From contig JANJGN010000052.1 of NCBI GenBank assembly GCA_026770705.1, positions 310,001 to 374,000 of the forward strand: a DNA stretch of 64,000 nucleotides. The letters are read 5' to 3'. This document shows, piece after piece, positions 13,431 to 62,882 of the stretch. The number at the start of each line of letters is the position of its first letter. Positions within the stretch are counted from its first letter, which is position 1. This DNA is from Isurus oxyrinchus. Lineage: Eukaryota. Made by a program: the position numbers and the translations under genes. The notes under the pieces are model-generated. The model saw only the letters and a program-made list of their open reading frames with translations, was not told the origin of the DNA and did no database searches.

Positions 13431-13548
13431 TACCTCTCTGATACGAAGGTGATTCTAACCAGGACACTGACCAGTTTCATTACAACTTAACCCAACATCA
13501 CACGTTATTTGTCCGCACTGACTGACCAGATTGTTGCTGTACAAAGCT

Positions 13549-14959: not shown

Positions 14960-15282
14960 TCAGCGCAGGACTCAACAAGACAGATCGCAGGTTTACCACA
15001 GAAAATGAACAACAATTTATATTTAAAGGGAAGAGAGTGCTGATTGGGTGGCAAGTGATCTCTGATTGGAGGAGAGTTGCCATGGAAAATAATGTGTGCG
15101 AGCTGTAAAGTTTAGACAGCTTGTCCCTTCATTCAGCAATAATCAATTAAAGATCAGTTAATTGCTATCGACTGTGAAGCACTTTGAGAGGTCTGAGAAT
15201 GTGGACACTGAGAACGGGCTGCACTGTCAGAGGGTCAGCGCTGAGGGAGTGCTGATGTAGAATGAAAGGTGTATGTACTTAC

Positions 15283-15579
15283 CTTGCACAGTTAGTACGA
15301 GGGTCTGCTCCGATGAAACAGATGGATATCTCACTCTGCAGCTGAGAGTGTGTCCGTGGTGTTTGAGTGATGGGATCAGGGTCAGAACAGAAGTATAGGT
15401 CAGAGTGACACCATGCTGAGTTACAGTGTTTGAGACTGATCCAGGTACGTCAGTGGGAGTGTCCCAGGTTAAGACAGGTGCTGCTGTTCCATTGCACGTT
15501 GTGTTGAAGGTGCAGCTTACATCCACACGCTTTCCTGCAATAATTTCAGCAGGGAATATCGTGGGTTTATCTGTGAAAT
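15283..15579 (-). CDS. Gene B Siglec C2-set (domain 2 type) exon, second copy
   Basis: TAG acceptor, GTAAGT donor, 297 nt, phase 1-1. DFTDKPTI..VSCTFNTTCNG..LTW..GHTLSCRV..LTVQ. Confidence 0.9.
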
Positions 15580-22688: not shown

Positions 22689-22899
22689 ATTGCGATTCCT
22701 GCTCTGCTCTATCGGTCTCTTGGCTGGAAATAAAAGCCGCTGTGTTACTGTTCAGAAACTGTTATTAATTGTGTTCCGGTCACTATTTTCCCTAAAAAAC
22801 AGATTCTCTGATTCTCATCAGAATACCTTTCTATGGGATCCTGCTATGCATTATCTACACTGTTCTAGCTAATGTAGAATGAAAGGTGTCCATACTTAC

Positions 22900-26134: not shown

Positions 26135-27560
26135 ATCATTACTGAAGGAGTGCTGCACTGTCAGGGGTATAGTACTGAGGGAGTGCTGCACTGTGTGAGG
26201 GTCAGTACTGAGTGAGTGCTGCACTATCAGAAGGTCAGTAATGTGGGATTGCTGCACTGTCAGAGGGCCAGTCGTGAAGTATTGCTGCAATGTCGGAGGG
26301 TCAGTACTGAGGGAGTGCTGCACTGTCAGAGGGACAGTAATGTGGGAGTGCTGCACTGTCAGTGTGTCAGTAATGTGGGAGTGCTGCATTGTCAGAGGGT
26401 CAGTAATGTGGGAGTTCTGCACTGGAAGAGGGTCATTAATAAGGGAGTGCTTCACTGTCGGGAGTATAGTACTGAGGGAGTGCTGCACTGTGGGAGGGTC
26501 AGTACTGAGTGAGTGCTGCACTATCAGAAGGTCAGTAATGTGGGAGTTCTGCACTGTCAGAGGGCCAGTAGTGAAGGAATGCTGCAATGTCGGAGGGTCA
26601 GTACTGAGGGAGTGCTGCACTGTCAGAGGGACAGTAATGTGGCAGTGCTGCACTGTCAGAGGGACAGTAATGTGGGAGTGTTGCACTGGAAGAGGGTCCT
26701 TAATGAGGGAGTGATGCACTGTCAGAGGATCAGTAATGAGGGAGTGCTGAACTGTCAGCGGGTCTGTACTGAGTGAGATTTGCACAGTCAGAGGGTCAGT
26801 ATTGAGGGGGTGCCAGACTGTGGGAGGGTTAGTACTGAGGTAGAGCGGAGTGTGAGAAGATATCCTTTCATGGCAAAGTTTAACTGGAATTTATTTAAAC
26901 AGAGATTCTAGTACTGTGTGTTATTGCTAAAGAAAGGATATGAGGAACTAAGTCTAGTTCCCCTCAGCCTAAAAATAATGTTCTCCGATTTCAATGATTT
27001 AGCATTGAAACCTCCCTCTTTGGGCATCAGTCTTGATTTAAACAACTCGCACAGCACTGTGGGAGGGTGAGTACTGAGGATGTGCTGCACTGTGGGAGGG
27101 GGAGTACTGAGGGAGTGCTGCACTGTGGGAGGGTGAGTACTGAGGGAGTGCTGCACTGTGGGAGGGTGAGTACTGAGGGAGTACTGCACTGTGGGAGGGA
27201 GAGTACTGAGGGAGTGCTGCACTGTGGGGGGGAGAATCCTGAGGGACAGCTGCATAGTGGGAGTTTGAATACTGAGGGAATGCTGCCCTGTCAGAGTGTC
27301 TGTACCTAGGGAGTGCTGAACTGTCGGAAAGTCATTAGTGATGGAGGGGTACAGTATCAGAGGGTCAGTATTCAGGGAGTGTTGCACTGTCAGATTGTCA
27401 GCCATGAGGGAATCCTGCATGGTCAGAAGGTCAATGATGACGGGGTGAAGCCCTTGAAAAGGGTCAATAATGAGGTAGTGCAGCACTGTCAGAGGGACAG
27501 TAATGAGGGAGCGCTGAACTGACGGAGGGTCAGCACTGAGGAAACGCTGCACTGTCAGTT
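26135..27560. repeat. 33-bp minisatellite with one copy of the ~220-bp block
   Basis: Paralog of 9395-12112. Confidence 0.9.
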
Positions 27561-28880: not shown

Positions 28881-28903
28881 TGAGATTGTTGCTGTACAAA
28901 GCT

Positions 28904-29043
28904 TCAAACAGGCTGTCGACTTCCTTTCACTGTTTGTCTCTCCCAGACACAGACTCCAGCGATAGTGATAACCACAGCCACAAGGAATATCACAGCTCGT
29001 ATTCCCAGGATCAGGATCACGTGCAGAATCTCTCCTCCACTGT
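28904..29043 (-). CDS. Gene C TM exon with charged Arg and short tail (activating type)
   Basis: Phase 1: SGGEILHVILILGIRAVIFLVAVVITIAGVCVWERQTVKGSRQPV-stop. Confidence 0.88.
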
Positions 29044-30161
29044 CTAGAGAACACACAGAAAGAAATCATCACTGACTCTCCGCTTTCAATCTCTCACTCT
29101 GGCTGAACAATTAAGCTTCATATCACTGCAACATTTGCTGTAATATTGACCCATCCACTGGGATTCAATGTGGAATGAATGTTTTCATTGTAAACACTCT
29201 AAGAGTGGACAATCGGAACTTTCCCCTTAGCGTGGAACATTGGTGAGAATGGATCATTGTGCTGTTGGACTCCCTGTCCAATGTTTCTCTCCATCGCTCT
29301 GTACAGGATTGTGCTGTAGAAAATTCTGGAAACGTTTAGTGCAGGGTGGAAATCCATCTCGGACGTGTGTGCGAATCGGGCAGGATCGAGATGGACTCCC
29401 CCACGGACTTACACCCCCCGCTTAATAAACAGTTCCAATCTTTACCCAGAGAGAGGGGAGAATGTGGAACTCGCTCCCACAGGGAGTGGTTCAGGTGAGT
29501 AGTAGCAAATTGGGAAGTGAAATTGCTTGAAAAGCTGGGAGATGCAAGGGTTAAGTGCTACCATGCCACCACTGGTGGGAGAGTGTAACTGCAGCGTGAC
29601 GTTTACATAGGCAATCCCCATTATGAACAGGGACATTGGACATCATGTGCAAAATGGGCTCTGGAAAGATGAGAACATGATGTAAGCTTTTCACCAACAG
29701 AAATGTCTTCGTAAACCTCTCCATCTCTCTCTTACTGTCAGATACTCAAACAACATTTCACACAGAATTACATAAGGAGGAGTTGGGACAGGTGACTGGT
29801 CAAAGGGTTAGGTTTCAGGAAGCTTTTTAAAGGAGGATAGAGAGTTAGAGAGGCAGAGAGTATCTGTGAGAATCTCTGTGCATCTGGGTGTCTAATAGAC
29901 TTTGCAATTTCCGCGTTCTTCCATAAACTTGAAAGGGAATACAACTCCCAGAATCCATGTCAACTCTCCGGTGCAGCACTGAGGGAGGTCAGGTAACCCA
30001 TGGGGGAGAATGTGTTAGTGTGTTTGTTTGTGAGTGTGTCCTTTTGTGTGCTCATACATGTGGGATTGTGTGTCTGCACGTGTCTATTTAGGTTTGTATA
30101 ATTGTGTGTGTTTGTTTAGTGTTTGAATCTGAGAGAGCTGTTGAAGTCTGTGTACACTCAC

Positions 30162-30312
30162 ATTCCACAGTGATGGTTATGAAACCCTCCACTGCTCCAT
30201 GATCATTCTCTGCCACACACTGATAGTCTCCAGTGTCCCTGGATGTAACATGAGGAATCACGAACCACAGCTCATTGTTGGAACTTGTTCTGTTCATTGT
30301 GATATTCAGATG
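30162..30312 (-). pseudogene. Gene C truncated Ig exon (C-terminal half only)
   Basis: ..VTSRDTGDYQCVAENDHG..ITVE with GTGAGT donor; in-frame TGA upstream. Confidence 0.75.
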
Positions 30313-30637
30313 TCAGGGCAGGACTCAACATGACAGATCACAGGTTTACCAACAGGAAGTGAACAACAATTTATATTTAATGGGAAGAGAGTGCTGATTG
30401 ATTGGCAAGTGGTCTCTGATTGGAGGCGGTGTTGCCATGGAAAATAATGTGTGCGAGCTGTAAACTTTAGACAGATTGTCTCTTCATTCAGTAATAATCA
30501 TATAAAGATCAGTTAACTTCTATCGACTGTGAAGCACTTTGAGAGGTCTGAGAATGTAGATACTGAGAACGGGCTGCACTGTCAGAGGGTCAGCGCTGAG
30601 GGAGTGCTGATGTAGAATGAAAGGTGTCGGTACTTAC

Positions 30638-30934
30638 CTTGCACAGTTAGTACGAGGGTCCGCTCCGATGAAACAGATGGATATCTCACTCTGCAGCTGA
30701 GAGTGTGTCCGTGGTGTTTGAGTGATGGGATCAGGGTCAGAACAGAAGTATAGGTCAGAGTGACACCATGCTGAGTTACAGTGTTTGAGACTGATCCAGG
30801 TACGTCAGTGGGAGTGTCCCAGGTTAAGACAGGTGCTGCTGTTCCATTGCACGTTGTGTTGAAGGTGCAGCTTACATCCACACACTTTCCTGCTATAATT
30901 TCAGCAGGGAATATCGTGGGTTTATCTGTGAAAT
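30638..30934 (-). CDS. Gene C Siglec C2-set exon
   Basis: 297 nt, phase 1-1, canonical splice sites; extra Cys (GKCVDVSC). Confidence 0.9.
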
Positions 30935-31747
30935 CTAACAGACAGAGAATGGATCCTTTTAGAGAAATATAACGTGAAACATCAGTTCAAATAGAAACCA
31001 CAGTCCCACAAGAGAAAGCACTTTTACAAGGATGATATCAGAACTGAGAGGTTACAATGATCAGGAGAGAATTTCCTAATTTCAGACTTAGTGGAGTTTC
31101 TGTCTCTCAGATGAATTCACTTCCACTTTGAGACAATTGAATTGACAATCCCAGGTGAGGGTGGGGGAGCAGCTCACAGTTCCTGACACACTGGCTTGTT
31201 ACTTTCTCCGAAATCTGCCAGATTAAAATTCTATCCTGTTCCCAGCAGGAGAGAATCCATTTGAACCAATCACTGAACCGGCATCTAAAACAGATGATCA
31301 GGTTATTGATCACATTGCTGTTTCTGGGAGCTTCCTGTGAATAAATTGGCTGCTGTGTGTCCCATATTACAACAAGGGCAACATTTCAAGAATTATTTCA
31401 TTGGTTGTGAATCCATTTGCAACGTACAGAGGTGTTGAACGGCGCTATAGAAATGCAAATCTTTCTTTTGTCGATATGTAAGACTGTCATACAGGGTTAG
31501 GGAGATCGATGGGAGTGGATAACCTGATAACATTGATGGACACAGTCAATACATTTAATCATTCATGTTAAAGTGAGTAGTAGAGGTTGCTTTAGGACTG
31601 AACTGGAAGCTATCACCAGGTTATTGAGAATCAGACAGTGTGTTATAATAAGCCGTGTTTTGTGTTAATATGTAAGCGTCACAGTTTGTGTTATTTCCCA
31701 TTGAGTGTTGAATGTGAATTGTTGAGTAATTATAACACAGCACTTAC

Positions 31748-32116
31748 CAGAAACGTGAAGCTGGGTTACAGGGTAATAGTTATGGCTCGGACCATTGTCA
31801 AATTCTATTCTGAAAAAATAAGGTCCTGCATCTTCCCGTCTTACGTTGTTTATAATCAGGGAACAGTCGCCATCTTTCAGGTCTCCAGACAGCCGGGTCC
31901 GATGGTGGAACCGTGGTAACTCGTGACTGTGATCCTCGGAGTGAAAGGCAATGGGAGCCCAGGGAATCTGATTCTCATTATTAAACCAGACTCCACCTCG
32001 CGGTTGGTTTTCCAGACACGATGGATAACTGTAATGACATGGAATCTGTACACACGAACCTTCCTGCGCTGTCACCTCTCGTGGAGTGTCACCTTTCCAC
32101 TCTTGTGACAGTCCAA
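31748..32116 (-). CDS. Gene C Siglec V-set exon V5 (second, internal V)
   Basis: 369 nt, phase 1-1, YFFRIE; extra Cys in YPSCL. Confidence 0.93.
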
Positions 32117-32178
32117 CTGGGGAGAGAAATATCAATATTTAACTCTGGATGGTTTGTGGATCCACTAGACTCAAATTT

Positions 32179-33000
32179 ACAGATGAGGCTGAATTGGGGG
32201 GATGGTCAATACTGAGGAGGACTACAACAAATTATTTTGGCATGAAGAATAGAAAAACAGGATATTATTTAAATGGAGAGAGGCTGCAGAATGCAGTACA
32301 GAGGGATCTGGGTGTCCTTGTACATGAATCACAGAAAGTCAGCATTCACGGAATGAGGAAGGCAAGTGGAATGTTGGCCTTTATTGCAAAGGGATGGAGT
32401 ATAAAAGGAGGGAAGTCTTGCAACAGCTGCACAGGGTGAGATTGTATCAGGAGCAGTGTGTACAGTTCTGGTCTCATTACTTAGGGAGGGATAGACTCTG
32501 CATTGGAGGCAGTTCAGAGGAGGTTCACTGGGCTGATTCCTGGGATGAAGGGGGTTTGTCCTGTGAGGAAATGTTGAGCAGGTTGGGCCTGTATCCATTG
32601 GAGTTTAGAAGAATGAGGGGTGACCTTATTGAAACATATCTGATTCCGAGGGGGCTTGACAGGGTGGATGCTGGGAGGATGTTTCCCCCTCGTGGGGGAA
32701 TCTAGAACCAGGGAGCACAGTTTCGGAATGAGGGCTCTCCCATTTAAGACTGAGATGAGGAGGAATTTCCTCTCTCAGAGGGGCGCTAGCCTGTGGAATT
32801 CTCTTCCCCAGAGAGCAGTGGAGGCTGGGCCATTGAATAGACTCAAGGCTGAGTGAGGCAGGTTTTTGATCGACAAGGGAGTCAAGGGTTTGGGGGACAG
32901 GCAGGAAAATGGAGTTAAGGCCACAACCAGATCAGTGAGAGCAGGCTGGAGGGGCCGAATGGCCTGCTCCTGTCCCTATTTCTTATGTTCCTACATTCTT
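32179..33000 (+). mobile_element. CR1-type LINE 3' fragment
   Basis: Paralog of 735-1562. Confidence 0.85.
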
Positions 33001-33074
33001 ACCTTCTTAAAATTTTAAAGCTGCAGAATAAACATGCAAGTGACTGACCCGCTCGACCCACCTTCCATCTGGGG

Positions 33075-37121: not shown

Positions 37122-38437
37122 TGTAATATGCCTTTCAGGGACAGCAGCATGACATCACTCGAGGGGAAGTGTGTCATGTGATTTTAGGAATTGGGTATAG
37201 CTTAAGTAAGTTCTATGTGTATTTGTGTGTGTTAGGGATAAGGTATATGTTTAAGTTCAAGTTTAGTTTGATTTCTGTATTTGTGTGTTAAGAAAGGGGG
37301 AAACTTCAGTTTTGGTTTCATTTTCGTTTAGCAATCTAATGGGGTTTGATGTCTCTTGAAGGAAAGTCAAAACAAACACAATGTGTAAGAAACTGTGCTA
37401 TTGCTAAGTAACAGTGATCCAGAGGGACGGACCCATAGAGACAGAGAAAAACAGAAATGTGCTTTCAGTTCTGTTGAAAGGAGTTGCCAGGAGAAGCAGC
37501 AAAGGAGCGGGACAGATAGTCAGTCCCAAAGTAAAGAAGAAGCCAAAGCCATCGAGTGGAACAGGAGAAAGGGCCAAGAAGACCTTCTACTCCAAAGAAG
37601 ATCAGGAATCTGAAAAAGGTCCTGTTAAGTCGAGATAAGATTGAGGAGCAGAGGAGGGATCCAAGCTAAAAGAGAAAAAGCAAAAGGACACAGACCTAAA
37701 GCAAAAAAGGCTTATTAGAAGCCAGAAGATCACAGGAGACAGCCAAATGTTGATGTCTCTTACTATGACCATGTGAAGCCATGGTGTTCCATTGGCATGA
37801 CTGAGCATTGGAGAGACAACGCGTAGAAGGAAGGCTGAATGCACGTGGCGATCCAGGGGGCAGGAACATGGGAAGGAGAGTTTGAAATCGTGGACGTGGA
37901 CCCTTGTGGAAGGTCTCTGAGTGAAAGTGTCATGTTAGAGAAGATTCCAAAGAGAGCACTTGACGAGTAGAGATTGGAAACTCTCATGTGAAAGATACAG
38001 TTTTGTAAGACCAGTTGCCTCATGGTGTAACAAGTGTCTGGAGTCAGTTGAGCTGAAACCCATAGCATTTGTTCCAATTGGGGTCTATCACTTGGTTACA
38101 GAATGTGGTGTCCCTGACACCAGGTCGTCTATTGGTTTGCATGAACTGTGTACTTAGTGTGAACATGAGAGTATAAGATAGTTATTGTAACTTGTATTCT
38201 ACTTATGAATCTGTAAATGTATAGGTCTGGGTGAAGGAGTAATGTAATATAGTTTGTCTTTCCTAGTTTAATAAATGTTTTATTCTTTTGTTAGAAGGTC
38301 ATCAGATGATTCCTGTGACTCTGTTCAGTAGCAGCACTCCACATTCCTAAATAAAAAATAAAAGTTAGGACCTATCAAGCTGAGTTCCACGCTGGGATCT
38401 GACTTGCCCAGTAGAAACATCAGCTGGGATGATAACA
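37122..38437 (+). mobile_element. Solo LTR-like element
   Basis: TGTAAT...GATAACA termini with internal AATAAA. Confidence 0.55.
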
Positions 38438-38439
38438 CC

Positions 38440-40430
38440 ATCCAGTCCAAGTTTCACTTTGGCCTGTGAGCAGAACACAGCTCACACAGTTTGGCTGCAG
38501 GTGTCTCCCAGCTTTCTATCCTTGTATATCTGTTCTCATGTCCCCATTCTAAATAACTGAACCCACAATGTATTTACCCAATTCCGTATCAGTGGCTGGT
38601 GCCTTTATATCATTATAAAAACACAACATGGTGATCAGCGGTGGCCAAACATTCTGGCAGCAAGATTCAGTACAGGTATGACGTGGTGAACAGCCTGAGA
38701 TCGAGCTACATGACATGAGACGACCCTCGATGCTTTGGTCAGACCACAACAGAGACACAGCATCAGAGAGGGTTGAAATTGCAGTGTACTGACTGCTCAG
38801 GAAACCTTTGAAGACACAGTGACGGGAAAGAGCTCAAGTAAAGAGCTGGGGAGCAGACGGATCCCTCGTGGTGAGATTACAGCACACGGCCTGTAGGTCA
38901 GTGAGTGGGACAGTGTGTATCGCCAGGACCAGCAGCGGGTTAGCTCAGTCAGGGAAGGCGAGTGACCAGGGTGTGGGCTGGATCGATAGTGAGCGAGGGA
39001 GAGTCAAACACACAAAAACCATTATAAAAATCAGCCCAGAGAAGTTAGTGATTATAACGGGCGGCTTTGAGATTGCTGAACAGCAAATTGAATAAAAACA
39101 AAGACTTCATTACTCCGTGGTGTGTTCCTGCCACAACCCGTCTTCGTGGGCGGAGCTTCGGAAAAGCACACAAAAAGGGCTAAAGCGACACTCATCCCAG
39201 ATCCTGTAGGAGAAGGAAGGTCAAAGGAATATTGTCAGAATGTCCACGAAATTCCCCAGTTTGAACTGGGATGTAGCTGACCGACTATCTGAATTCAGAA
39301 TGTTTAAACAGCGTACAGAGCTCTGGTTTCCTGATTCAGGTGTGACTGAACCAGACGAACCGCCCATAAAAATTCACCTCGCGATTGGGAATGAAGGTCT
39401 ACACAGGCTGAACACGTCAGGATTAACAGCAGAAGAGCGAAAGGATCCCCAATAGATATGGACGACATTGGAAGACAGGTTCAGAATCAGGTGAAACTCC
39501 ATATTCATCAACTAGAGTTTATGTCATTTCATCAGCCTACACAATCCATAGACCACTTCATCAGCCGATGTAGAGAAAAGGGTACGCACTGTGATTTCAA
39601 ACACAGAGCCTGCAGACACAGTTGTTGAGTTGGTGATCGCTTCCATTCCCATGGAAGCCTTCCAGAAAGATCTGCTAGATAAGACCAAAACCTATAGCAT
39701 TGAAGAGCTACTCAAGGATGGACATAAATACGAAGTGATCCTCGCAGGTCAACGAAGCTTACAGGTCCTCAGTACAACATCAATTGTTGACACACTCACT
39801 AGAACATCCAAACCTAGTGAGACGTGTGGAAGGTGTGGCCTTCGGCAGGCACCAAGGAAATGCCCAGCTTTCCACCAATCCTGCAAGGCTTGTGGCAGAA
39901 AGGGCCATTGACAGCGGCAGGGCACGAGAGCAAAGGCTGATGCAGTTACAAAGAGCCGTGCGCTGATCCAAACAGACCCTACACAATGGGGAACCTTCAA
40001 GCAATAAGAATGACCAGCCGCTATCCCATCAGGAACATATACATGTGGTGATTGACAAACCAGGAAATGGCGATGATGTGCATGGCGAGACGAGGAGCGG
40101 TGATCGATATTCCACCTCTCACACATATCCTGACGTGGCTTGCCAATAAATTGTGGATTGTGGTCTTTATTGATCTTTCTGGGCACATCGAATAAACTGA
40201 AAATGTCCCATAGGGGTGGGATTTTCTGGCCCCACCCACTGCCAGGATTGTCCGGTCCGGCCGAAAGCTAATGGATTTATGTCTGTCCCAGTCTCAGAAA
40301 CTACCCCATTACCTCTGTTCATGACATAACATTGAAATATGCAGAAAGTTTCAACAATATTGGCAGTTTCAAGGGAGCTGCATCATTACACCTGCAGGAG
40401 AATGCAAGTCTGTCAGACTCCTTGCATTCA
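38440..40430 (+). mobile_element. Gypsy-like LTR retrotransposon remnant
   Basis: Paralog of 5180-7175; PBS-like 38629-38644; gag knuckle in ORF 39591-39911. Confidence 0.75.
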
Positions 40431-41802
40431 AATAAATACAATCCAACTTTGTCACACTATCTTGTGCCTTAACTGGCCAATAATTTCTATGCCTTCCAGT
40501 TTCATTTGCTCTCTCTTCTAATTTTGGCTGTGCCTCTCCCTCTGCTGAACCTCCTCTCGGGATCCCATCCCCTGCCATGTTAGTTTAAAGCCTCCCCAAT
40601 TGCATCAAGGGCAAAATGCCAATTGAAACCAGGGACAACATCCAAGAATGACAATCCCACAGATCACTGTGAGCTTTTAAAGACACCTCCAGACAAGGTT
40701 ACCACCACAAGATCTGGGCGTCACAGCAGATCACGTCAATGCGTTAGAGACTCAAATATTAGCAGATCTAAACACTTGTATAATTGTCAAGAAATTTGAA
40801 AATGATACCAGAAACCTCTTGTTCCCTGTCCTTCTCAAAGATCCATCCCTGCAGCGGTAGCCTTAAGAGTTATTGATGTGGGGCTTAATTTATCAGATTG
40901 TAGAATGATCTGGAACAGAAGGAAGCCATTTGCCCATCGAACATGTGCTGGGCCTTTGAAAGTTCTGTCCAATTAGTCCCACTCTAACCTCTGCTCTCTC
41001 CCCCACAGCCCTGCAAAATGTCCCCTTCAAGTATTTATCCAGTTCCCCTTCTGAAAGTTCCTGTTGAATCTGCTTCCACCGCCCTTTCAGGCAGTGACTC
41101 AATGGTCTCTCTCTGAGCTGCAAAGTGCTAATATTCTGTGAATTTAAAATTCTGCAGCAGGTCAGAGACAATCATGATAACTCAGAATATTTGACAGTTT
41201 TACACACGGACAGCTTTACCTTCCTTCTCTCTTTCAGTTATCTTGCTCCCTTATTGAAGTATCTAGCAAGGTGAGAATGGACAGGAAGTGTGACACTGAA
41301 CAGCCTGTCTATTCTAGGAGCTGCTGTGTTGTCTTCATGGGAAATTCTGATTAAAATCAGCAAAAGACACAAAATTACAGCGCATTGTTATCCGTGTCCT
41401 AGCATCGGGATAGACTTCATCCCCCAGTTTTTATCCCTGATTCTCTATGCAGCCGATCGCTCCCCTGTCACTCACTGACCTACACTGACTCCCAGTACAG
41501 CAATGACTCAAATTTCAAATTCTCATCATTGATTTCTTACCCCACCATTCCCCCTCTACACTCTCTATCTGTGTAACCTCCTCCAACCCTAAAACCCTCT
41601 GAGATCTCTGCTCTCCTCCAAATCTACTGTCAGACAGGGAGTCAGTGTATATCAGTGAGCACAGGGGTGATGGGTGAATGGGACTTGGTGTGAGTTTGTA
41701 CACTGCCTCACTGCTGAATCAGTTCCCAATCAGAGCTCAATAAGAATGATCTTTTACAAAGACTATTCACCATGAATCTGTCCGAGCTGACGATGATATT
41801 AC

Positions 41803-41842
41803 CTTGGAGAAGCGACAGGAGGAAGTAAGATTTCCCGATCAT
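41803..41842 (-). CDS. Gene C leader exon, coding part
   Basis: MIGKSYFLLSLLQ+G, GTAATA donor, upstream TTTCTCTTTCAG acceptor. Confidence 0.88.
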
Positions 41843-42124
41843 TGTCCACTCCCAGATATTTCCTCAGCTTCTAACTCTGAAATTCTGAAAGAGAAAGGAG
41901 TTAATGAGACTTCACCTCTTGTCCTACAGCTCTCGAGAGATCAGAACTGATTTTAGACAGTATCTTCACAGACTAATTTGATTCTCTGTGGGATGATAGG
42001 TGCTCTGCAGAGAGTTACAAGGCTTTAAGAAAGAAAAGCAAGGAAGGACTTGCATTTCCATAGCACCTTTCACCTCCTCAGGGTGTCCCAAAGCTCATGT
42101 CTCTGCAATTCCTCATCCCTTTGG

Positions 42125-44291: not shown

Positions 44292-44560
44292 NNNNNNNNN
44301 NNNNNNNNNNNNNNNNNNNNNNNNNNNNNNNNNNNNNNNNNNNNNNNNNNNNNNNNNNNNNNNNNNNNNNNNNNNNNNNNNNNNNNNNNNNNNNNNNNNN
44401 NNNNNNNNNNNNNNNNNNNNNNNNNNNNNNNNNNNNNNNNNNNNNNNNNNNNNNNNNNNNNNNNNNNNNNNNNNNNNNNNNNNNNNNNNNNNNNNNNNNN
44501 NNNNNNNNNNNNNNNNNNNNNNNNNNNNNNNNNNNNNNNNNNNNNNNNNNNNNNNNNNNN
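44292..44560. other. Assembly gap
   Basis: Run of N. Confidence 1.
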
Positions 44561-48140: not shown

Positions 48141-48363
48141 NNNNNNNNNNNNNNNNNNNNNNNNNNNNNNNNNNNNNNNNNNNNNNNNNNNNNNNNNNNN
48201 NNNNNNNNNNNNNNNNNNNNNNNNNNNNNNNNNNNNNNNNNNNNNNNNNNNNNNNNNNNNNNNNNNNNNNNNNNNNNNNNNNNNNNNNNNNNNNNNNNNN
48301 NNNNNNNNNNNNNNNNNNNNNNNNNNNNNNNNNNNNNNNNNNNNNNNNNNNNNNNNNNNNNNN
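48141..48363. other. Assembly gap
   Basis: Run of N. Confidence 1.
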
Positions 48364-48580: not shown

Positions 48581-48773
48581 NNNNNNNNNNNNNNNNNNNN
48601 NNNNNNNNNNNNNNNNNNNNNNNNNNNNNNNNNNNNNNNNNNNNNNNNNNNNNNNNNNNNNNNNNNNNNNNNNNNNNNNNNNNNNNNNNNNNNNNNNNNN
48701 NNNNNNNNNNNNNNNNNNNNNNNNNNNNNNNNNNNNNNNNNNNNNNNNNNNNNNNNNNNNNNNNNNNNNNNNN
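48581..48773. other. Assembly gap
   Basis: Run of N. Confidence 1.
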
Positions 48774-53998: not shown

Positions 53999-54960
53999 TG
54001 TTATGATGTGGTAGATGATGTGTGCCAGGGGGACAAAATCCACAAGGGAAACTTGGTCACACTATTACAACGGTTTTGCAATTTGTATTTATTATGAGAT
54101 GTGTGCACTGAATTCAGGAGTAATGTGTCAACCAAGACATTTAGAGATCTTAAAAATTAAATTTCAATATTTATTAACAAAATACAAGATTTCAAGCACA
54201 CACATAAGGATACGGTTACTACTATAACAAATCCTAAACTTCCTAATTAACCTTAAAGATGGTGGACAGGCATTGGGAAGTCTGGAGATGAGTAGTACAA
54301 CCCCATTTAAGGCAACAGTCCAAAATAGATTTTAGATTTAAAAACAAAACCAGCAAGTTAACACAGAACACACTTGAGAGTGGAATTCCAAATGGCTTTC
54401 TCAATCTATAGTCACTGAACATAACAGACCTATGGAGAAATGCCTGGAGGCTTCTTCAAGGCTGATTCACACACTCTTGTTAGATTTTACATGGTCCCCA
54501 AAATAGCCTTTCATTCTCCTTTGTTTATGTTCCTCTCTCTTTGATATGTAAATTTCATTGTTCCATATGTCTTTGGAATGATACATTTCCCATAATATAA
54601 AAACTTTCATGTTGCCAATGTTGTCAATAACCTTTGGGAAAAATAAACACACTCCTTTGCCTTGCATATCGGCCTCGTTGTAAACAGACCAACAGCCCTT
54701 TGAAATCCAAACAATCCCGTCACTTATCTAAAAATGCAAATTCCCCTCACACCTTACATGCTAAGTCAGCCTCCATGTGTTCTCATTAGCATTTCAAGTA
54801 CATTTCTACATCTAGCTTCTTTTGATAATCTCAAACTTGCAGTCTACCTGACTCCAGATGTAATTAAACCACACAGACAGACCCATCTACACTCACACCC
54901 ATAAACCTAGTTTACAACAAACCAGGAAAATATTAAGCAAATTATTATACTTTCGTACCA
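53999..54960 (-). mobile_element. Solo LTR-like element nested in the LINE
   Basis: TG...CA ends, C-rich imperfect flanking repeat, LINE sequence on both sides. Confidence 0.65.
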
Positions 54961-55251
54961 CCCCTGATTCCCATTGACTCCAGTTTTACTCGGGCTCCTA
55001 GATGCCACACTCGGTCAAATGCAGCCTTGATGTCAAAGGCAGTCACTCTCACCTCACCTTGTATTAACAGATGTAACATTATACATAATTCATAAGCTTC
55101 TCACAATCTTTTACAGCATGGAAAAAGGTGCAGCATTCAGAAAGCTCACTCAGAACTAATAAAAAAAAGTTGAGCAACATCATATTTCTGTTCATTACTA
55201 TTTGGCCATGTTGGCTGCACACACCCCACAGCCCCGCTCCCTGTTTCACAC

Positions 55252-55500
55252 TCAGTTTTTCTGGAACCTGATCTGTGCGTATTCCGTGTCCTCGCTCCTG
55301 TGCACAGTCCTGTCACCGCTGGGCAGCTTTGAAAAGTTGATGTTGGCGTAGAGAATCTCGTCGGGTTTGTCAGGATTCCCATGTCCAACATCGCCTCCTA
55401 CTGGACCTTCAGAGAGATCCCGGGGAGCTGGGGTCTCCCCCTCACTAGTTGTGTCTCTGGTTGTGTCCCGGGGCTCAGTAATCAGCACGTTCTGTTTACC
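55252..55500 (-). CDS. Gene D distal terminal exon: ITIM (ILYANI) plus ITSM (TEYAQI)
   Basis: TCTCTGTAG acceptor, phase 0: GKQNVLITEP..DEILYANINF..EDTEYAQIRFQKN-stop. Confidence 0.9.
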   Translation of the reverse strand, partial: GKQNVLITEPRDTTRDTTSEGETPAPRDLSEGPVGGDVGHGNPDKPDEILYANINFSKLPSGDRTVHRSEDTEYAQIRFQKN

Positions 55501-55574
55501 CTACAGAGAAATGGAAACAGAAGACATCCTCACATCAATTACTGGCACTGATAGGGTTAAATTATTGTGCAGAC

Positions 55575-56090
55575 TTGTTTAATTCTCTGTCTCCTATCGG
55601 ATAAAAGGCACCACCTATGGCAGTGCAGCACTCCCTCAGTACTGACCCTCCAACAGTGCAGCACTCCCTCAGTGCTGACCCTCCGACAATACAGCGCTCC
55701 CTCAGTACTGACCCATCGACAGTGCAGCACTCCCTCAGTACTGACCCTCTGTCAGTGCAGCACTCCCTCAGTACTGACCCTCCAACAGTGCAGCACTCCC
55801 TCAGTGCTGACCCTCCGACAATACAGCGCTCCCTTAGTACTGACCCTCTGTCAGTGCAGCACTCCCTCAGTACTGACCCTCCAACAGTGCAGCACTCCCT
55901 CAGTACTGTCCCTCTGACAGTGCAGCACTCCCTCAGTACTGACCCTCCGACAGTGCAGCACTCCTTCAGTACTGACCCGCTGTCAGTCCCGCACTCCCTC
56001 GGTAATGGCTCTGGTGAGTGACGGCTTGGATTCTGCACTCAGGTGCCTGGTGTGAGGCTCAATAACATGAACCTTGTAATCAGAGAGAGA
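55575..56090 (-). mobile_element. SINE with internal 33-bp tandem expansion
   Basis: The array is flanked by SINE-like sequence on both sides; a shorter paralog lies at ~58780-59030. Confidence 0.75.
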
Positions 56091-57199
56091 GGATGAGAGA
56101 GAGAGATAGAGATGAAGGGACAGAGACAGAGTGTTATTAATCTATTAATGTTTGTATTATAAATGCAAACTGTCTTTTTAAACAGAGGTTTAGTCTGTGT
56201 GTGTGTCTGTGTGTATTTAAATTGGATTAAAGACAGCCAGTCTGTGTGCTTTGATGTATAGTAGTTTTGAGATGCAAACAAAGAGGTAAAGTGGTAATTT
56301 GCATTTTTAAATAAAACATTCAAAGTCTGAGAGTGAAATCTTAAACCAATCAACGTTTATATTACTAATAAAATTGATACGATGAAAGGGGATTTATTAT
56401 TGGAAGAGATGGAGTTCAAAGGTCCTGATGATACATTGCGAATTTACCTTCAAACAGAAGCCATAAGACCATAAGACATAGGATGAGAAATTAGACCATT
56501 CGGTCCATCGAGTCTGCTCCACCATTCATACATGGCTGATATGTTTCACAAACCCCATTCTCCCACCTTCTCTCCTAACCATTGATCCCCTGACCAATCA
56601 AGAGCCCATCAATCTCCATCTTCTTCACACTCAAGAGCTGGGTATAACTTGAGCAGTTTTGTGTGTGCAGAGCAGAGGCTTGTAACATCAAAGCAGCTGT
56701 AATACTTCACCTGTCTGCAAAGGAACCAAAGTGAAAGGAACCTCATTTGGAATTTGTGAGGTGAAAATGCTTTGCCTAGTGTCTGCTTAAAGTCTATGGG
56801 TTGTCTTGGAGGAGATTAGTTTGAGAATTTGTTATAAAGTTATGATAATACTAGTTTGTAGCCATGTGCATATGTTTAACTTGTGAAAATTAATAAATGT
56901 CTCATTTAGATTGATATAAAATCATCTTGAGAACTGGTGGTCTTATTCCTGAATTTAGAGCTGCATCTCAAACATTCCACTGGGAAATATAGGTTACGAC
57001 AGCTGTTTAAAGTTTCCCTCTGGGATTTTAAGCAACAGCCTTTACCAGTTGCTGTGTCATAACAGAGAGACAGCATGATACTGAACCATTGCTGACCCCA
57101 CAGGTACAAATCAGTGGGTAACTGGGCTGGGAATCTGGGACATATGTTGTCTACACACTGAGATTGAAGCTTTGGAGTGAGTGTAAACAGCTCCTGTAC

Positions 57200-57281
57200 C
57201 TGGTGCTTCACAGAGAGTGGACTGGGGGTCAATGCAATGTCACTGGTCCCTGAAACTCTCTCCTCCATCGCTGTCTTTCTC
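57200..57281 (-). CDS. Gene D cytoplasmic exon 1, distal copy
   Basis: CAG acceptor, CAG|GTACAG donor, 82 nt, phase 2-0: RKTAMEERVSGTSDIALTPSPLSVKHQ. Confidence 0.82.
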
Positions 57282-57411
57282 CTGCAATAACAAAATATCA
57301 CACTGTGGTTATCATATAGCAGAGAGTCAGTGCAGCACAGACACAGAGCCCACTGTAACCTTACACCAATGACTGGACTCTCTCTTTAAATCACCTCTGC
57401 ACAAAGCACAG

Positions 57412-57880
57412 AATCAAGACGCTCGACACCATCCAGGACAAAGCAGCCCGATTGATCCATACCACATCCACCACATTAAACATTCACTCCCTCCACCATG
57501 AACACACAGTGGCAGCAGTGTGTGTACCATCTACAAGATGCACTGCAGCAACTCAGCAAGGCTCCTTCAACAGCACCTTCCAAATACGCGACCTCTACCA
57601 TCCAGAAGGACAAGGACAGCAGACACATGGGAACACCACCACCTGGAAGTTCCCCTCCAAGTCACTCACCATCCTGACTTGGAAATATATCACCGTTCCT
57701 TCACTGTCGCTGGGTTAACATCCTGGAATTCCCTCTCTAACAGCACTGTGGGTGTACCTACACCACATGGACTGCAGCGGGTGAAGAAGGCAGCTCACCA
57801 CCACCTTCTCAAGGGCAGTTAGAGATTGGCATCAATGCGGACATCATCAGTGACAGCCACATTCGATGTAAGAATTAAAA
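57412..57880 (+). mobile_element. LINE 3' fragment (paralog at ~59747-60217)
   Basis: LDTIQDKA..IYKMHCSNS..SWNSL..KKAAHHHLLKG; same family as 52975-53998. Confidence 0.8.
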
Positions 57881-57898
57881 ACCTCACAGCTCAATGTA

Positions 57899-57904
57899 TT
57901 TATT
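57899..57904 (-). terminator. Candidate polyA signal for the proximal tail of gene D
   Basis: Minus-strand AATAAA ~530 nt after the stop at 58433, next to the duplication junction. Confidence 0.45.
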
Positions 57905-58432
57905 GTGACCCTGCTGCACACACGCCCTGTCGAAGGAACCTCTGTGGTTCCATTGTTAATCGAAGCAGATCAGAGTTACTGCAACAACTTGCATTTATAT
58001 AGCACCTTCAATGTAGCAAAATGTCCCAAGGCTCATCCGGGGATTGTTAGTCACATTTCACCTGACTCTGAGGCACATGAGGAGATATTAGGGACAGGAG
58101 ACCAACTGCTGAGTCAACAAAGTCAGTTATTAACGGGCATCTTAAAGGAGGAGCTGGAGATAGAGAATGAGAGACAGACACAGAAAGAAAGAGAGAGACA
58201 GAGAGGAAGAGAGAGAGAGAAAGAGAGAGAGACAGTGAATCTCACTCCCCAATGGCTCAGCATCCAGTCCTCTCTGGAGAAGCATTTCATTCCAAACCAC
58301 ACCAACCGTAGCCCAATTCCATCCCTTCCTCCCTCTCTCCCCCTCTCCCCCAGTGGGTTGTTTCCTGTTCCCAGGAATCTCAATCCCTACCCGCACACCC
58401 ACATTTCCTCACTCCCACTCCCCATTTCTCAT

Positions 58433-58681
58433 TCAGTTATGCTCAAACCTGATCTGTGCGTATTCCGTCTCCTCTTCCCTGTGGACAGACCCATCACCAC
58501 TGGACACCCTCAAAACTTGGGGATTGGCGTAGAGAAACTCTTCAGGTTTGCCGGGGTTCCCAAGTCCAGCATCGCCTCCCACTGCACCTTCAGAGGGACC
58601 CCGGGGAGCTGGGGTCTCCCCCTCGCTAGTTGTGTCTCTGGTTGTGTTCCGGGGCTCAGTAATCAGCACGTTCTGTTTACC
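58433..58681 (-). CDS. Gene D proximal terminal exon: degenerate ITIM (FLYANP) plus ITSM (TEYAQI)
   Basis: TAG acceptor, phase 0, 249 nt open to the stop, same length as the distal copy. Confidence 0.85.
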   Translation of the reverse strand, partial: GKQNVLITEPRNTTRDTTSEGETPAPRGPSEGAVGGDAGLGNPGKPEEFLYANPQVLRVSSGDGSVHREEETEYAQIRFEHN

Positions 58682-59534
58682 CTACAGAGAAATGGAAACA
58701 GAAGACATCCTCACATTATTTACTGGCACTGATAGGGTTAAATTATTGTGCAGCTTCGTTAATGTCAGTCGTGTCTCAGTGGGTTTAACTCTCTCTCCCA
58801 TGTCTTATGAAAGAAACCACCTATGGCAGTGCAGTGCTCCCTCAGGACTGACCCTCCAACAGTGCAGCACATCCTCAATAGTGACCCTCTGTCAGTCTCG
58901 CACTCCCTCAGTACTGACCCGCTGTCAGTCTCGCACTCCCTCGGTAATGGCTCTGGTGAGTGACGGCTTGGATTCTTCACTCAAGTTTCTGGTGTGAAGC
59001 TCATTAACGTGCACCTTGTAATCAGAGAGAGGATGAGAGAGAGAGAAAGAGAGAGAAAGAAAGGGAGGTTGAGATAGAGAGAGAGACTGGAATTTGAGAG
59101 GTGAAAATGCCTGGAATCTGCTTAAAGACTATGGGTTGTCTTAGAGGAGATTAGTTTGAGAATTTGTTAAAAAGTTATGATAATACTAGTTTGTAGCCAT
59201 GTGCATATGTTTAACTTGTGTAAATTAATATATGTCTCATTTAGTTTGATATAAACCCATCTCGAGAACTGGTGGTCTTATTCCTGAATTTAGAGATGCA
59301 TCTCAAACATTCCACTGGGAAATATAGTTTATGACAGTTGTTTAAAGTTTCCCTCTGGGATTTTAAACAACAGCCTTTACCAGTTGCTGTGTCATAACAG
59401 AGAGACAGCATGATACTGAACCATTGCTGACTCCACAGGTACAAATCAGTGGGTAACAGGGCTGGGAATCTGGGACATGTGTTGTCTACACACTGAGATT
59501 GAAGCTTTGGAGTGAGTGTAAACAGCTCCTGTAC

Positions 59535-59616
59535 CTGGTGCTTCACAGAGAGTGGACTGGGGGTCAATGCAATGTCACTGGTCCCCGAAACTCTCTCCTC
59601 CATCGCTGTCTTTCTC
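59535..59616 (-). CDS. Gene D cytoplasmic exon 1, proximal copy
   Basis: 82 nt, phase 2-0; same peptide as 57200-57281. Confidence 0.85.
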
Positions 59617-60339
59617 CTGAAATAACACAATATCACACTGTGGTTATCATATAGCAGAGAGTCAGTGCAGCACAGACACAGAGCCCAGTGTAACCTTACA
59701 CCAATGACTGGACTGTCACTTTCAATCACTTCTGCACAAAGCACAGAATCAAGAAGCTTGACACCATCCAGGACAAAGCAGCCCGATTGATCTACACCCC
59801 ATCCCCCACATTAAACATTTACTCCCTCCACCATGAACACACAGTGGCAGCAGTGTGTGTACCATCTACAAGATGCACTGCGGCAACTCAGCAAGGCTCC
59901 TTCAACAGCACCTTCCAAACCCACGACCTCTACCATCTAGAAGGACAAGGGCAGCAGACACATGGGAACACCACCACCTGGAAGTTCCCCTCCAAGTCAC
60001 TCACCATCCTGACTTGGAAATATATCACCGTTCCTTCACTGTCGCTGGGTCAAAATCCTGGAACTCCCTCTCTAACAGCACTGTGGGTGTACCTACACCA
60101 CATGGACTGCAGCGGGTCAAGAAGGCATCTCACTACCTCATTCTCAAGGGGCAATTAGGGAATGGGCAATTAGTATTGGCCACGCCAGTGACAGTCACAT
60201 TCGATGAAAGAATTTAAAATCTCACAGCTCAGGAGGAAGCCACTCAGCCCATCGTGCCTGTGCTGGCCCTTTGTAAAAACTGTCCAATTAATCCTAAACA
60301 AATGTTTATATTAAAATCAAGTTAAATCTTCAGACTTAC

Positions 60340-60436
60340 TTTCTCACACAGATGAAGATGAAGATTCCAGCCAGGAAAACACTCAACATGATCCCAGCCG
60401 TGAACAATCCTACTGTCCATTTACTGGAGTCTCTAC
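60340..60436 (-). CDS. Gene D TM exon (uncharged)
   Basis: TTTTTACAG acceptor, GTAAGT donor, phase 1-2: GRDSSKWTVGLFTAGIMLSVFLAGIFIFICVR(K). Confidence 0.9.
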
Positions 60437-60865
60437 CTGTAAAAACAGCCATTAATTACTGCACTACAGGTTTACAATGATGCTCCGATGTATCTCGAGA
60501 AGCGATACACTCACTCAGTGTTTAAATACTCATTCTCGGGCAATGCTGACATTTATTGTCCATCCCTAGTTTCCCTTGAGAAGGTGGTGGGGGGTCTTCC
60601 TCCTGAACCACTGGTTTGTCCCAAACTGGGAGACCAGTTCAGAGGGCAGGTAAGAGTTAACCATGTTGGTGTTTGAGACTGGAGTCACATATACACCCAG
60701 ACCTGTTAAAATGGACAGGTTTCCCTCACTAAATGTGTAATTATATCTTTAATTTCTATATATATGTATCAACTAACATGACTAAAATAATCATTTATCA
60801 CCTCATCTTCACACTGTTGTTTGTGGGATCTTGCTCTGCACAAATCAGCTGTTGCGTTTCTCAAC

Positions 60866-61356: not shown

Positions 61357-61650
61357 CTTTGACCCACAGATACATCTTGAACATGGCTTCCCCGTGTGGG
61401 TTTTGAACCGAGCAGGATGCCATCACTCCCCCCTCATCCTGGGGTCTCATCAGGGTGAGGGAACCAGTCACCAGATGCCCATCTCTGACCTGCCACGACA
61501 CAAAACCTCCGTGTGTTTGGTTACCACTGATTTTGGCACTGGGCAGGTGCCAGGTGAGGTCTCCGGGTGGGTTGGAGTTGGCCACACAGACGCAGGTGAC
61601 CCCCTCTGACCTCCGAGTGCACTCCAACTGCTGGGAAATCTCCGGCTTAT
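61357..61650 (-). CDS. Gene D membrane-proximal Ig exon (MAG D5 / CD33-related type)
   Basis: 294 nt, phase 1-1: YKPEISQQLECTRRSEGVTCVCVANSNP, with the C..CxC pattern of Siglec membrane-proximal domains. Confidence 0.9.
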
Positions 61651-62606: not shown

Positions 62607-62882
62607 ATTGTACGTTCAGGTGGGTGATGTTGGAGATGCTGTTACCCATTGGGTTCCTCGCTGTGCAGTAGAAACCTGCATCATTCTCCCGTGTTACAGG
62701 AGTGAAGGAGAGAGTGCGGCTACTTGTGTTTAACTGGGTGCTGGTGTTCCCCTCGATCCTGAACCAGGTGTAATGAGATATCGGTGGGACACTTTCACTG
62801 GAGCAGGTTAATGTGATATTGCTTCCCTCTCTTATCCCACCTGAGGATCTGCTGATGGACACCATCGTCTCCTGTGGGGGAT
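62607..62882 (-). CDS. Gene D C2-type Ig exon (CD22/sialoadhesin-like)
   Basis: 276 nt, phase 1-1: PPQETMV..REGSNITLTCSSESVPP..YTWF..DAGFYCTARNPMG..LNVQ. Confidence 0.92.

What the first reader, a model, noticed from the sequence alone, without database searches (positions are those of the whole stretch)
55243..60231. Gene D has two cytoplasmic tail cassettes with different signalling motifs
Seen: both cytoplasmic exons are tandemly duplicated (~55243-57892 and ~58424-60231) after a single TM exon, with frames and splice sites intact. The distal tail has ILYANI+TEYAQI. The proximal tail has FLYANP+TEYAQI and its own AATAAA (57904-57899). Exon 1 is identical in protein, while changes cluster around the ITIM. 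Known: ITIM+ITSM recruits SHP-1/2, and TxYxxI can bind SAP/EAT-2 or SHP-2. Inference: choice of last exon could tune one receptor between strongly inhibitory and ITSM-only signalling.
Basis: partly seen in the sequence, partly recalled or inferred. Interest (0 to 1): 0.78.

Follow-up and report, generated by a model that had tools for sequence, protein, structure and literature searches.

The report
Shark Siglec gene, doubled tail module
A shark immune-receptor gene of the sialic-acid-sensing Siglec family carries two copies in a row of the two exons that encode its inner signalling tail; the copies are real, old and both kept intact, and they are more likely strung into one long tail than used as two alternative endings.

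Summary
Behind one TM exon (60340-60436, minus strand), gene D has two copies of a two-exon tail module.

- The two modules are not a fresh duplicate with changes at the ITIM. They belong to two old tail types: A (YANP, no ITIM) and B (YANI, ITIM). Both occur in great white and basking shark Siglec-like proteins.
- Four automatic RefSeq models in those two species read two modules in series. One of them (P0017) has the same A-then-B order as gene D.
- The same join is possible in the window. A GT directly behind the TEYAQI codons of the proximal module (exon end 58449) is in frame with the distal module's first exon.

RNA contigs show that the distal end is expressed and that a c1-c2 splice exists. 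No listed junction tells the isoforms apart, and paralogues contaminate the signal.

My best reading, at about 0.5, is a serial four-tyrosine tail with an optional short ITIM-less form. This scan had already noted a fourfold tail module in another Siglec gene of this genome (s1-872013).

The parts
62607..62882 (-). Ig (C2/I-type) exon of gene D, phase 1 in and out
   Evidence: Read from the sequence. Pfam Ig_3 E 1.8e-12. Best solved-structure matches are CEA, contactin-2, CD22 d6-d7 and MAG.
61357..61650 (-). Last Ig exon of gene D (…CVCVANSNPPGDLTWHLP…LWVK)
   Evidence: Boundaries read. 91.5% identical over 106 residues to P0021, which NCBI names Siglec-13 of Carcharodon.
60340..60436 (-). 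Single transmembrane exon, 97 nt, donor AAA|GTAAGT, leaves in phase 2
   Evidence: Only one copy in the window.
57894..60231 (-). Proximal duplication unit, including a 520-nt spacer that has no counterpart behind c2b
59535..59616 (-). c1a, first cytoplasmic exon of the proximal module (phase 2 in, phase 0 out)
58433..58681 (-). c2a, second cytoplasmic exon of the proximal module, type A tail: FLYANP … TEYAQI RFEHN stop
58447..58448 (-). GT of a candidate internal 5' splice site in c2a (CAG|GTTTGA). Used as an internal exon, c2a would end at 58449, in phase 2, in frame with c1b.
   Evidence: The same join (TEYAQI-R-RKTA…) appears in P0001, P0015, P0016 and P0017.
57899..57904 (-). AATAAA, 529 nt behind the c2a stop, followed by TGTGAGGTTTTT, at the junction of the two units
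55233..57893 (-). Distal duplication unit. Its intron 2 is about 1 kb longer and holds a 33-nt tandem array.
57200..57281 (-). c1b, first cytoplasmic exon of the distal module, same protein as c1a
55252..55500 (-). c2b, second cytoplasmic exon of the distal module, type B tail: ILYANI … TEYAQI RFQKN stop
54093..55251 (-). Probable distal 3' untranslated region, with AATAAA at 54175 and 54093
   Evidence: RNA-type contigs lie on 55004-55156 (0 differences), 54590-54810 and 55024-55499.

Best explanation
Gene D is a shark Siglec-type receptor gene whose two-exon signalling module was duplicated in tandem long ago.

The proximal module is of tail type A (YANP, no ITIM). The distal module is of the ancestral type B (ILYANI, an ITIM). 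Both keep TEYAQI, and both are kept intact by selection. These points are shown.

The following is inferred. The main mRNA most likely reads the modules in series. TM joins c1a, and c1a joins c2a. A weak 5' splice site directly behind the TEYAQI codons of c2a then joins c1b, and c1b joins c2b. The product is one tail with four tyrosine motifs: FLYANP, TEYAQI, ILYANI, TEYAQI.

If cleavage at the proximal AATAAA wins over that weak splice site, the result is a short tail that ends at the c2a stop and lacks the ITIM. In this reading c2a is a composite internal/terminal exon. The variable is whether the ITIM module is added, not which of two tails is chosen.
For: The duplication is real and old:
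- Identity is 91.8-95.3% in introns and 80.7% in c2 nt 83-249.
- The 3' flanks cannot be aligned: local score 23, against a shuffle mean of 21.

Both copies look constrained:
- Neither has a stop or frameshift.
- c2 nt 1-82 differ at 2 of 82 positions, against 19 of 125 in the adjoining intron (p=0.002). c1 differs at 1 of 82, against 72 of 1067 in the flanking introns (p=0.056).

The same order occurs in another shark:
- P0017 of Carcharodon has the same A-then-B order.
- Its modules share 68 of 77 and 74 of 82 residues with gene D's.
- WIN_c2a pairs with the P0017 proximal module with support 87/83.

Relatives are modelled in series:
- 4 of 18 hits cover 98-100% of a two-module query: P0001 and P0016 from Cetorhinus, P0015 and P0017 from Carcharodon.
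- All four read TEYAQI-R-(R/K)KTA….

The join is possible in the window:
- CAG|GTTTGA at c2a nt 234 is the only CAG|GT among its four phase-2 GTs. It leaves phase 2, which is what c1b needs.
- It has G at +5, while the same site in c2b (CAG|GTTCCA) does not.

RNA contigs:
- The distal UTR is covered by perfect or near-perfect RNA-type contigs (X2: 55004-55156, depth 1166.6).
- The spacer behind c2a shows 0 and 33.1 in X2's bins.
Against: - No serial junction (58449 to 57281) is among the 15 joints listed. 544 further rows were not shown.
- By consensus the internal donor is weak, with T at +3 and +4.
- The four RefSeq models are automatic. I could not see their evidence, and one may have seeded the others.
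- c2a keeps its stop at the same codon as c2b. It also has a canonical AATAAA with a GU-rich stretch behind it.
- dN/dS between c2a and c2b is 0.71 and does not differ from 1 (p=0.41).
- The reads tool warns that contig depth cannot rank parts of a gene. Contigs from paralogues were laid on these exons (13 contigs at one site in X1).
Confidence: 0.5

Rival explanations
1. Mutually exclusive last exons. One mRNA ends with TM-c1a-c2a at the proximal poly(A) site and gives an ITIM-less tail. Another skips to the distal module (TM-c1b-c2b or c1a-c2b, which give the same protein) and gives an ITIM+ITSM tail.
For: - All of these joins are in frame, and c1a and c1b encode the same peptide.
- The proximal module has its own stop and AATAAA.
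- A c1a-to-c2a joint (58680/1 to 59534/5, ends CT..AC) stands in X1 (depth 5.07) and X2 (depth 940.9).
- c2b with its UTR is in RNA-type contigs of X2 and X4.
Against: - Skipping c1a and c2a would have to bypass splice sites that match those of the distal module. The last 20 nt before c2a and c2b are identical.
- No TM-to-c1b or c1a-to-c2b joint is among the listed rows.
- The spacer that would be the proximal 3' UTR has intron-like contig depth in X2 (0 and 33.1). The tool warns against reading depth.
- Of the 9 stored proteins whose modules fell in type A, 5 have one module (P0004, P0013, P0018, P0019, P0021). The 4 with two modules are all modelled in series.
Confidence: 0.2
2. Only one module is ever translated. 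The other is a silent leftover of the duplication: either a distal relic behind a gene that ends at 57904, or a proximal relic that is always skipped.
For: No isoform-specific junction was seen. dN/dS between the two copies is not below 1 with significance.
Against: - Both reading frames, all splice sites and both TEYAQI motifs are intact despite 6-19% DNA divergence.
- The exons are more alike than the adjoining introns.
- The same pair, in the same order, has conserved motifs in Carcharodon P0017.
- The distal UTR is in RNA-type contigs. Contigs on c1b run on into c2 (3 records in X1).
Confidence: 0.12
3. The duplication is an assembly artefact, such as a haplotype placed twice.
For: None found. 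I could not check independent genomic long reads. In the probable DNA run X18, no listed piece bridges the unit junction.
Against: - The copies differ by 6-19%.
- They differ by a roughly 1-kb insertion and by unrelated 3' flanks.
- They are of two different tail types.
- An independent species has the same order in one gene model.
Confidence: 0.02

Closest known systems
RefSeq models with two tail modules in series: LOC121274124 (P0017) and LOC121274079 (P0015) of Carcharodon carcharias; XP_078389619.1 (P0001) and LOC144671602 (P0016) of Cetorhinus maximus
   Same: Same TM, c1 and c2 exon types. P0017 has the same order: FLYANP module first, then the ITIM module. All four join directly behind TEYAQI.
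   Different: These are automatic predictions from other species or loci. P0001, P0015 and P0016 have two type A modules and no ITIM. Identity to gene D's modules is 88-90%, so none is this gene's own product.
Fourfold tail module in another Siglec-type gene of this genome
   Same: Tandem copies of the same kind of two-exon tail module behind one TM exon. Its follow-up also preferred in-frame stringing over alternative endings.
   Different: It has four copies rather than two and lies on other DNA. I did not see its sequence.
Myelin-associated glycoprotein (Siglec-4), L-MAG and S-MAG
   Same: A Siglec whose two isoforms differ only in the cytoplasmic tail, set by use of an exon that carries a stop codon (PMC3683929, abstract and introduction passages).
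   Different: In MAG a small cassette exon is included or skipped. There is no duplicated module and no ITIM choice.
CD22 and Siglec-10/Siglec-G tails
   Same: Several tyrosine motifs in one tail. Siglec-G/10 has an ITIM, an ITIM-like motif and a Grb2 site. CD22 binds Grb2 at YENV and SHP-1 at its ITIMs (PMC6286995, passages). Gene D's YAN cores fit YxN.
   Different: The mammalian tails are not built from a recent exon-pair duplication. No binding has been tested for the shark motifs.
IgM heavy chain, secreted versus membrane mRNA (recalled, no call)
   Same: A weak 5' splice site inside a terminal exon competes with a proximal poly(A) site.
   Different: That switch changes membrane anchoring, not signalling motifs. 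For gene D the competition is inferred only.

Membership tests
Siglec family (CD33-related type) | N-terminal V-set domain with the sialic-acid-binding arginine (…YFFR.E…) | not testable with these tools
   Gene D's V exons lie beyond the window end. A paralogue's V exon in the window (31749-32117, minus strand) has its 17 best solved-structure matches all among Siglecs, and its FFRIE aligns with FFRVE of Siglec-5.
Siglec family (CD33-related type) | C2-type Ig domains, then a single TM | tested here: met
   Pfam Ig_3/Ig_2. CD22 and MAG are among the structure matches. The TM exon was read.
Siglec family (CD33-related type) | Homology to proteins named Siglec | tested here: met
   P0006, named Siglec-10 of Stegostoma, matches both Ig exons at 64-68% and the tail. 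P0021, named Siglec-13 of Carcharodon, matches at 91.5%. The names are automatic.
ITIM, consensus (S/I/V/L)xYxx(I/V/L) (recalled) | Sequence fits the consensus | tested here: met
   ILYANI in c2b fits. FLYANP in c2a does not, because of F at -2 and P at +3.
ITIM | Phosphotyrosine-dependent binding of SHP-1/SHP-2 | not testable with these tools
   Needs phosphopeptide pull-downs.
ITSM, consensus TxYxx(V/I) (recalled); the 'ITIM-like' motif of Siglecs | Sequence fits the consensus | tested here: met
   TEYAQI is present in both modules. It lies within a 23-nt stretch that is identical in the two copies.
Grb2 SH2 site, pYxN (YENV of CD22: PMC6286995) | Asn at +2 of the tyrosine | tested here: met
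   YAN is present in both modules. In the list, most relatives keep N at +2 of the membrane-proximal tail tyrosine (YANP, YANI, YTNI, YINV, YVNP, YANA, YANT), but several have S (YASI, YASP). Binding is untested.
Alternative last exon / composite terminal exon | Proximal stop codon with its own poly(A) signal | tested here: met
   TGA at 58433-58435 and AATAAA at 57904-57899.
Alternative last exon / composite terminal exon | Both mRNA forms seen | tested here: inconclusive
   One search shows a c1-c2 joint and distal UTR contigs. No listed joint separates the isoforms, and paralogues are mixed in.

The most novel reading that the evidence does not exclude
c2a is a composite internal/terminal exon. 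Competition between its weak internal 5' splice site and the proximal poly(A) site would let a cell switch one Siglec between two forms: a short ITIM-less tail (YxN + ITSM) and a long tail that adds an ITIM and a second ITSM. This would be an IgM-like RNA-processing switch applied to the strength of an inhibitory receptor. It would have been made possible by exon-pair duplication and reused in several lamniform Siglec genes (two and four modules).
Probability: 0.25. Interest if true: 0.6.

Novelty: new variant of a known kind. Interest (0 to 1): 0.42.

Why it matters
It would show how an immune receptor's signalling strength can evolve by copying a whole two-exon tyrosine-motif module that can be spliced in frame. 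That is a simple route to tails with many motifs, such as those of CD22.

It also points to a Siglec tail type (YANP) seen here only in great white and basking shark proteins. This type lost the ITIM fit but stays conserved.

I found nothing on shark Siglec tails in three paper searches, so the system is open to study. The general ideas, modular tyrosine motifs and alternative tails, are well known.

Tried and rejected
- Pfam on both tail exons gave no family.
- A word search with the c2a peptide gave no candidate. This search only sees proteins of 45-143 residues.
- A search for further copies of the TM or tail exons in the window found none. A donor paralogue for the proximal module could therefore not be sought here.
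- A local alignment of the two 3' flanks was no better than shuffles: 23, against a mean of 21 and a maximum of 38.
- Positive selection at the ITIM is not supported. dN/dS is 0.71 overall and 0.49 in the diverged half, and synonymous sites are diverged too. dN against dS gives p=0.41.
- A compensated +1/-1 frameshift over 12 nt could have turned INFSKL into PQVLRV. A gapped alignment saves 4 mismatches for 2 gaps (score 316 against 308). That is too weak to claim.
- A search with the P0006 tail region gave 17 hits, none a long lamniform protein. I did not find gene D's own annotated product.
- I considered taking contig depth as expression level. The tool warns against it, so I use it only as a weak hint.
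- The organism is not established. Ig exons are 90-97% identical to Carcharodon proteins. The run organisms are coded.
- I did not ask for any paper supplements.
Full report
ANATOMY. Gene D runs on the minus strand. The window holds the following parts.
- Two Ig exons, 62607-62882 and 61357-61650, both in phase 1.
- One TM exon, 60340-60436.
- Two copies of a two-exon cytoplasmic module: c1a 59535-59616 with c2a 58433-58681, and c1b 57200-57281 with c2b 55252-55500.

Every acceptor ends in AG and every donor starts with GT. TM leaves in phase 2, c1 takes phase 2 and leaves in phase 0, and c2 runs to TGA. c2a encodes …EEFLYANPQVLRVSSGDGSVHREEETEYAQIRFEHN. c2b encodes …DEILYANINFSKLPSGDRTVHRSEDTEYAQIRFQKN. 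The window holds no further copy of the TM or tail exons.

THE DUPLICATION IS REAL.
- 60231..59088 matches 57893..56748 at 93.6% over 1150 columns, and 58946..58414 matches 55740..55233 at 81.5%.
- Identity by part is given below.

| Part | Identity |
|---|---|
| 5' block | 91.8% |
| c1 | 98.8% (81 of 82) |
| first part of intron 2 | 95.3% |
| last 130 nt of intron 2 | 84.8% |
| c2 nt 1-82 | 97.6% |
| c2 nt 83-249 | 80.7% |

- Behind the stop codons the flanks cannot be aligned: local score 23, shuffle mean 21, maximum 38.
- The distal intron 2 is about 1 kb longer.
- Copies this different cannot be a haplotype placed twice.
- I could not test independent genomic long reads. In the probable DNA run X18 no listed piece bridges the unit junction.

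SELECTION AND HISTORY.
- The exons are more alike than the neighbouring introns. c2 nt 1-82 differ at 2 of 82, against 19 of 125 in the intron (p=0.002). c1 differs at 1 of 82, against 72 of 1067 (p=0.056).
- The diverged part of c2 is diverged at silent sites too. dS is 0.51 in codons 42-82 and 0.06 in codons 1-41. dN/dS is 0.49 there and 0.71 overall, not different from 1 (p=0.41).
- So the cluster of changes around the ITIM is not a sign of recent adaptive change. It marks a block of older origin.

FAMILY.
- The tails match no Pfam family. The Ig exons are ordinary Ig_3/Ig_2, with CEA, contactin-2, CD22 and MAG among the best solved relatives.
- A V exon of a neighbouring paralogue (31749-32117) has its 17 best solved matches all among Siglecs, with the FFR.E arginine aligned.
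- Gene D's own V exons lie beyond the window. Its Siglec membership therefore rests on its C2 exons and tail.
- Those match proteins that NCBI names Siglec-10, -13, -8 and CD33-like in sharks. The names are automatic.

RELATIVES. The word search with c2a found nothing, so I ran the exhaustive profile search with the two c2 peptides aligned. It gave 12 proteins at E up to 0.001. Two further word searches, with stored proteins as queries, gave 18 and 17 hits.
- Of 40 stored proteins, my TM pattern found a tail in 29. Of these 29, 4 have two modules in series: P0001 and P0016 of Cetorhinus maximus, and P0015 and P0017 of Carcharodon carcharias (names).
- All four read …TEYAQI-R-(R/K)KTA…. That means they leave the first c2 directly behind TEYAQI and enter a second c1.
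- P0017 has gene D's arrangement: FLYANP…TEYAQI first, then LLYANI…TEYAQI. It shares 68 of 77 and 74 of 82 residues with c2a and c2b. The crosswise values are 55 of 77 and 56 of 82.
- I built a tree of 24 rows: the 2 window peptides plus 22 segments from 18 proteins.
  - P0022 and P0038 dropped out because my pattern missed them.
  - P0007, P0009-P0012, P0014, P0026-P0037, P0039 and P0040 were not entered.
- The tree puts all 13 YxNP-type rows on one side of a branch with support 99/96. It pairs c2a with the proximal module of P0017 at 87/83.
- The label was defined by residues inside the alignment, so part of this clustering is built in.
- The four rows from other shark orders (Stegostoma, Hemiscyllium, and two from Scyliorhinus torazame) are all on the type B side. 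In this sample, type A is therefore derived and seen only in the two lamniform species.

THE SERIAL ROUTE IN THE WINDOW.
- c2a has four GTs in phase 2. Only one has CAG in front: CAG|GTTTGA at nt 234, which makes the exon end at 58449.
- It leaves two bases of a codon (AG). c1b supplies the third base (G), as it does behind the TM exon, so the join is in frame and gives Arg, as in the four models.
- By the usual consensus (recalled) the site is weak, with T at +3 and +4, but it has G at +5. The same site in c2b (CAG|GTTCCA) lacks that G.
- Four proteins are therefore possible from this gene: short A, short B (by two routes that give the same protein), and long A+B.
- I did not build or search the joined model.

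RNA. One call laid Logan contigs of four coded runs on 54550-60500 at 92% likeness.

Seen:
- A joint 58680/1 to 59534/5 with ends CT..AC, which is the c1a-c2a splice. X1 has one contig at depth 5.07 and X2 has one at depth 940.9.
- Loose ends at 57199 in X1 (3 records), whose 17 letters are the start of c2.
- Loose ends at 60339 (X1 2 records, X2 1 record) that are the start of c1.
- Contigs on c2b and the distal UTR:
  - X2 on 55004-55156, no differences, depth 1166.6.
  - X2 on 55189-55434, 8 differences.
  - X4, a 497-letter record laid on 55024-55499 with 21 differences, whose last 21 letters leave the genome at the c2b acceptor.
- Low-depth contigs in the spacer: X1 on 58004-58145 and 57848-58002, the latter crossing the AATAAA, and X4 on 58246-58363.

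Not seen among the 15 listed joints (544 were not shown): 58449-57281, 60340-57281, 59535-55500 and 57200-55500.

Caveats:
- c1a and c1b differ at one base, and the first 82 nt of c2 differ at two. Short contigs therefore fit both places.
- Paralogues are clearly laid here. There are 13 contigs at one c2b site in X1. X2 also has a TM contig preceded by a …GFITITVE exon end, which matches 14809-14836 and 30162-30189 rather than gene D.
- The tool states that contig depth cannot rank parts of a gene.

The RNA data show that c1-c2 splicing and the distal end are expressed. They do not show which isoforms gene D makes.

READING. The following are shown:
- an old tandem duplication;
- two tail types;
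- both modules intact and conserved;
- an in-frame internal donor;
- the same architecture modelled in series in two other species.

It is inferred that gene D's main product is the long A+B tail, with a short A form when the proximal poly(A) site is used (0.5). A silent relic is unlikely (0.12), and an artefact very unlikely (0.02).

In functional terms (recalled consensus rules):
- the long tail would carry one ITIM, two ITSM-like motifs and two YxN cores;
- the short A tail would carry no ITIM.

YxN is the kind of site that binds Grb2 in CD22, and Siglec-G/10 combines an ITIM, an ITIM-like motif and a Grb2 site (PMC6286995, passages). No binding is shown for the shark motifs.

KNOWN THINGS.
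- Alternative tails in a Siglec are known from MAG, where an exon with a stop codon gives S-MAG and its skipping gives L-MAG (PMC3683929, abstract and introduction passages; PMC2116301, abstract start in the listing).
- CEACAM1-L/S, the 2B4 long and short forms, and the IgM secreted/membrane switch are recalled, not checked.
- Three searches for papers on shark or cartilaginous-fish Siglecs listed none about their tails, judging by titles and abstract starts.
- Within this scan, a fourfold tail module in another Siglec-type gene of the same genome was already noted and read as in-frame stringing (s1-872013). I reached the serial reading, before I saw that note.

LIMITS.
- The evidence behind the RefSeq models is unknown to me.

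Noticed in passing
window 55620-56000; also about 9880-12110, 20340-22690 and 26140-27560: Long tandem arrays with a 33-nt period (…GTCAGTACTGAGGGAGTGCTGCACTG…) lie in introns of the receptor genes. The one in the distal intron 2 accounts for part of the size difference between the two modules. In the probable DNA run, depth there is in the tens of millions.
   Followed up: no
window 14809-14836 and 30162-30189 (minus strand): The upstream exon end joined to a gene-D-like TM exon in an RNA contig of run X2 (…GFITITVE) matches these two Ig exons of other genes with one mismatch each, not gene D's last Ig exon. Paralogues with gene-D-like TM exons are therefore expressed, and they contaminate read laying on gene D.
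   Followed up: partly
window 55320-55399 (c2b): Expressed c2b-like contigs of runs X1, X2 and X4 differ from the window at seven listed sites within 80 nt, while the adjoining UTR contig is identical. By my hand comparison with the alignment, at three of the sites (55399, 55375, 55372) the read letter equals the c2a state. This hints at sequence exchange between modules or at paralogue or allele variation.
   Followed up: no
window 58511-58523 against 55331-55342: A gapped alignment places a 1-nt gap in each copy, 12 nt apart. Type A's PQVLRV could therefore be type B's INFSKL read in a shifted frame (the shifted c2b reads QLFKA). The score gain is small, 316 against 308.
   Followed up: partly
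window 58441-58448: The residue behind RF is E (GAG) in c2a. In the type A tails that end their protein it is K, apart from one model cut short at RFK, and in the type B tails that reach that position it is Q. The G of that codon supplies +5 G of the candidate internal donor. This would fit selection for donor use, or it may be chance.
   Followed up: no
window 1-1637 / 31445-33074; 4445-8866 / 37695-42121; 13528-15823 / 28883-31179: Large direct segmental duplications (96.9%, 93.9% and 93.5% identity) cover the other Siglec-type genes of the window.
   Followed up: no
stored proteins P0030-P0033 (Chiloscyllium, Hemiscyllium, Rhincodon): Carpet-shark relatives have IVYANA, VVYANT or LVYANT at the first tail motif. 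The ITIM +3 position is lost there too, while YAN is kept. This suggests that the conserved core is YxN rather than the ITIM.
   Followed up: no
window 44292-44560, 48141-48363, 48581-48773: There are three runs of N. They were left untouched.
   Followed up: no
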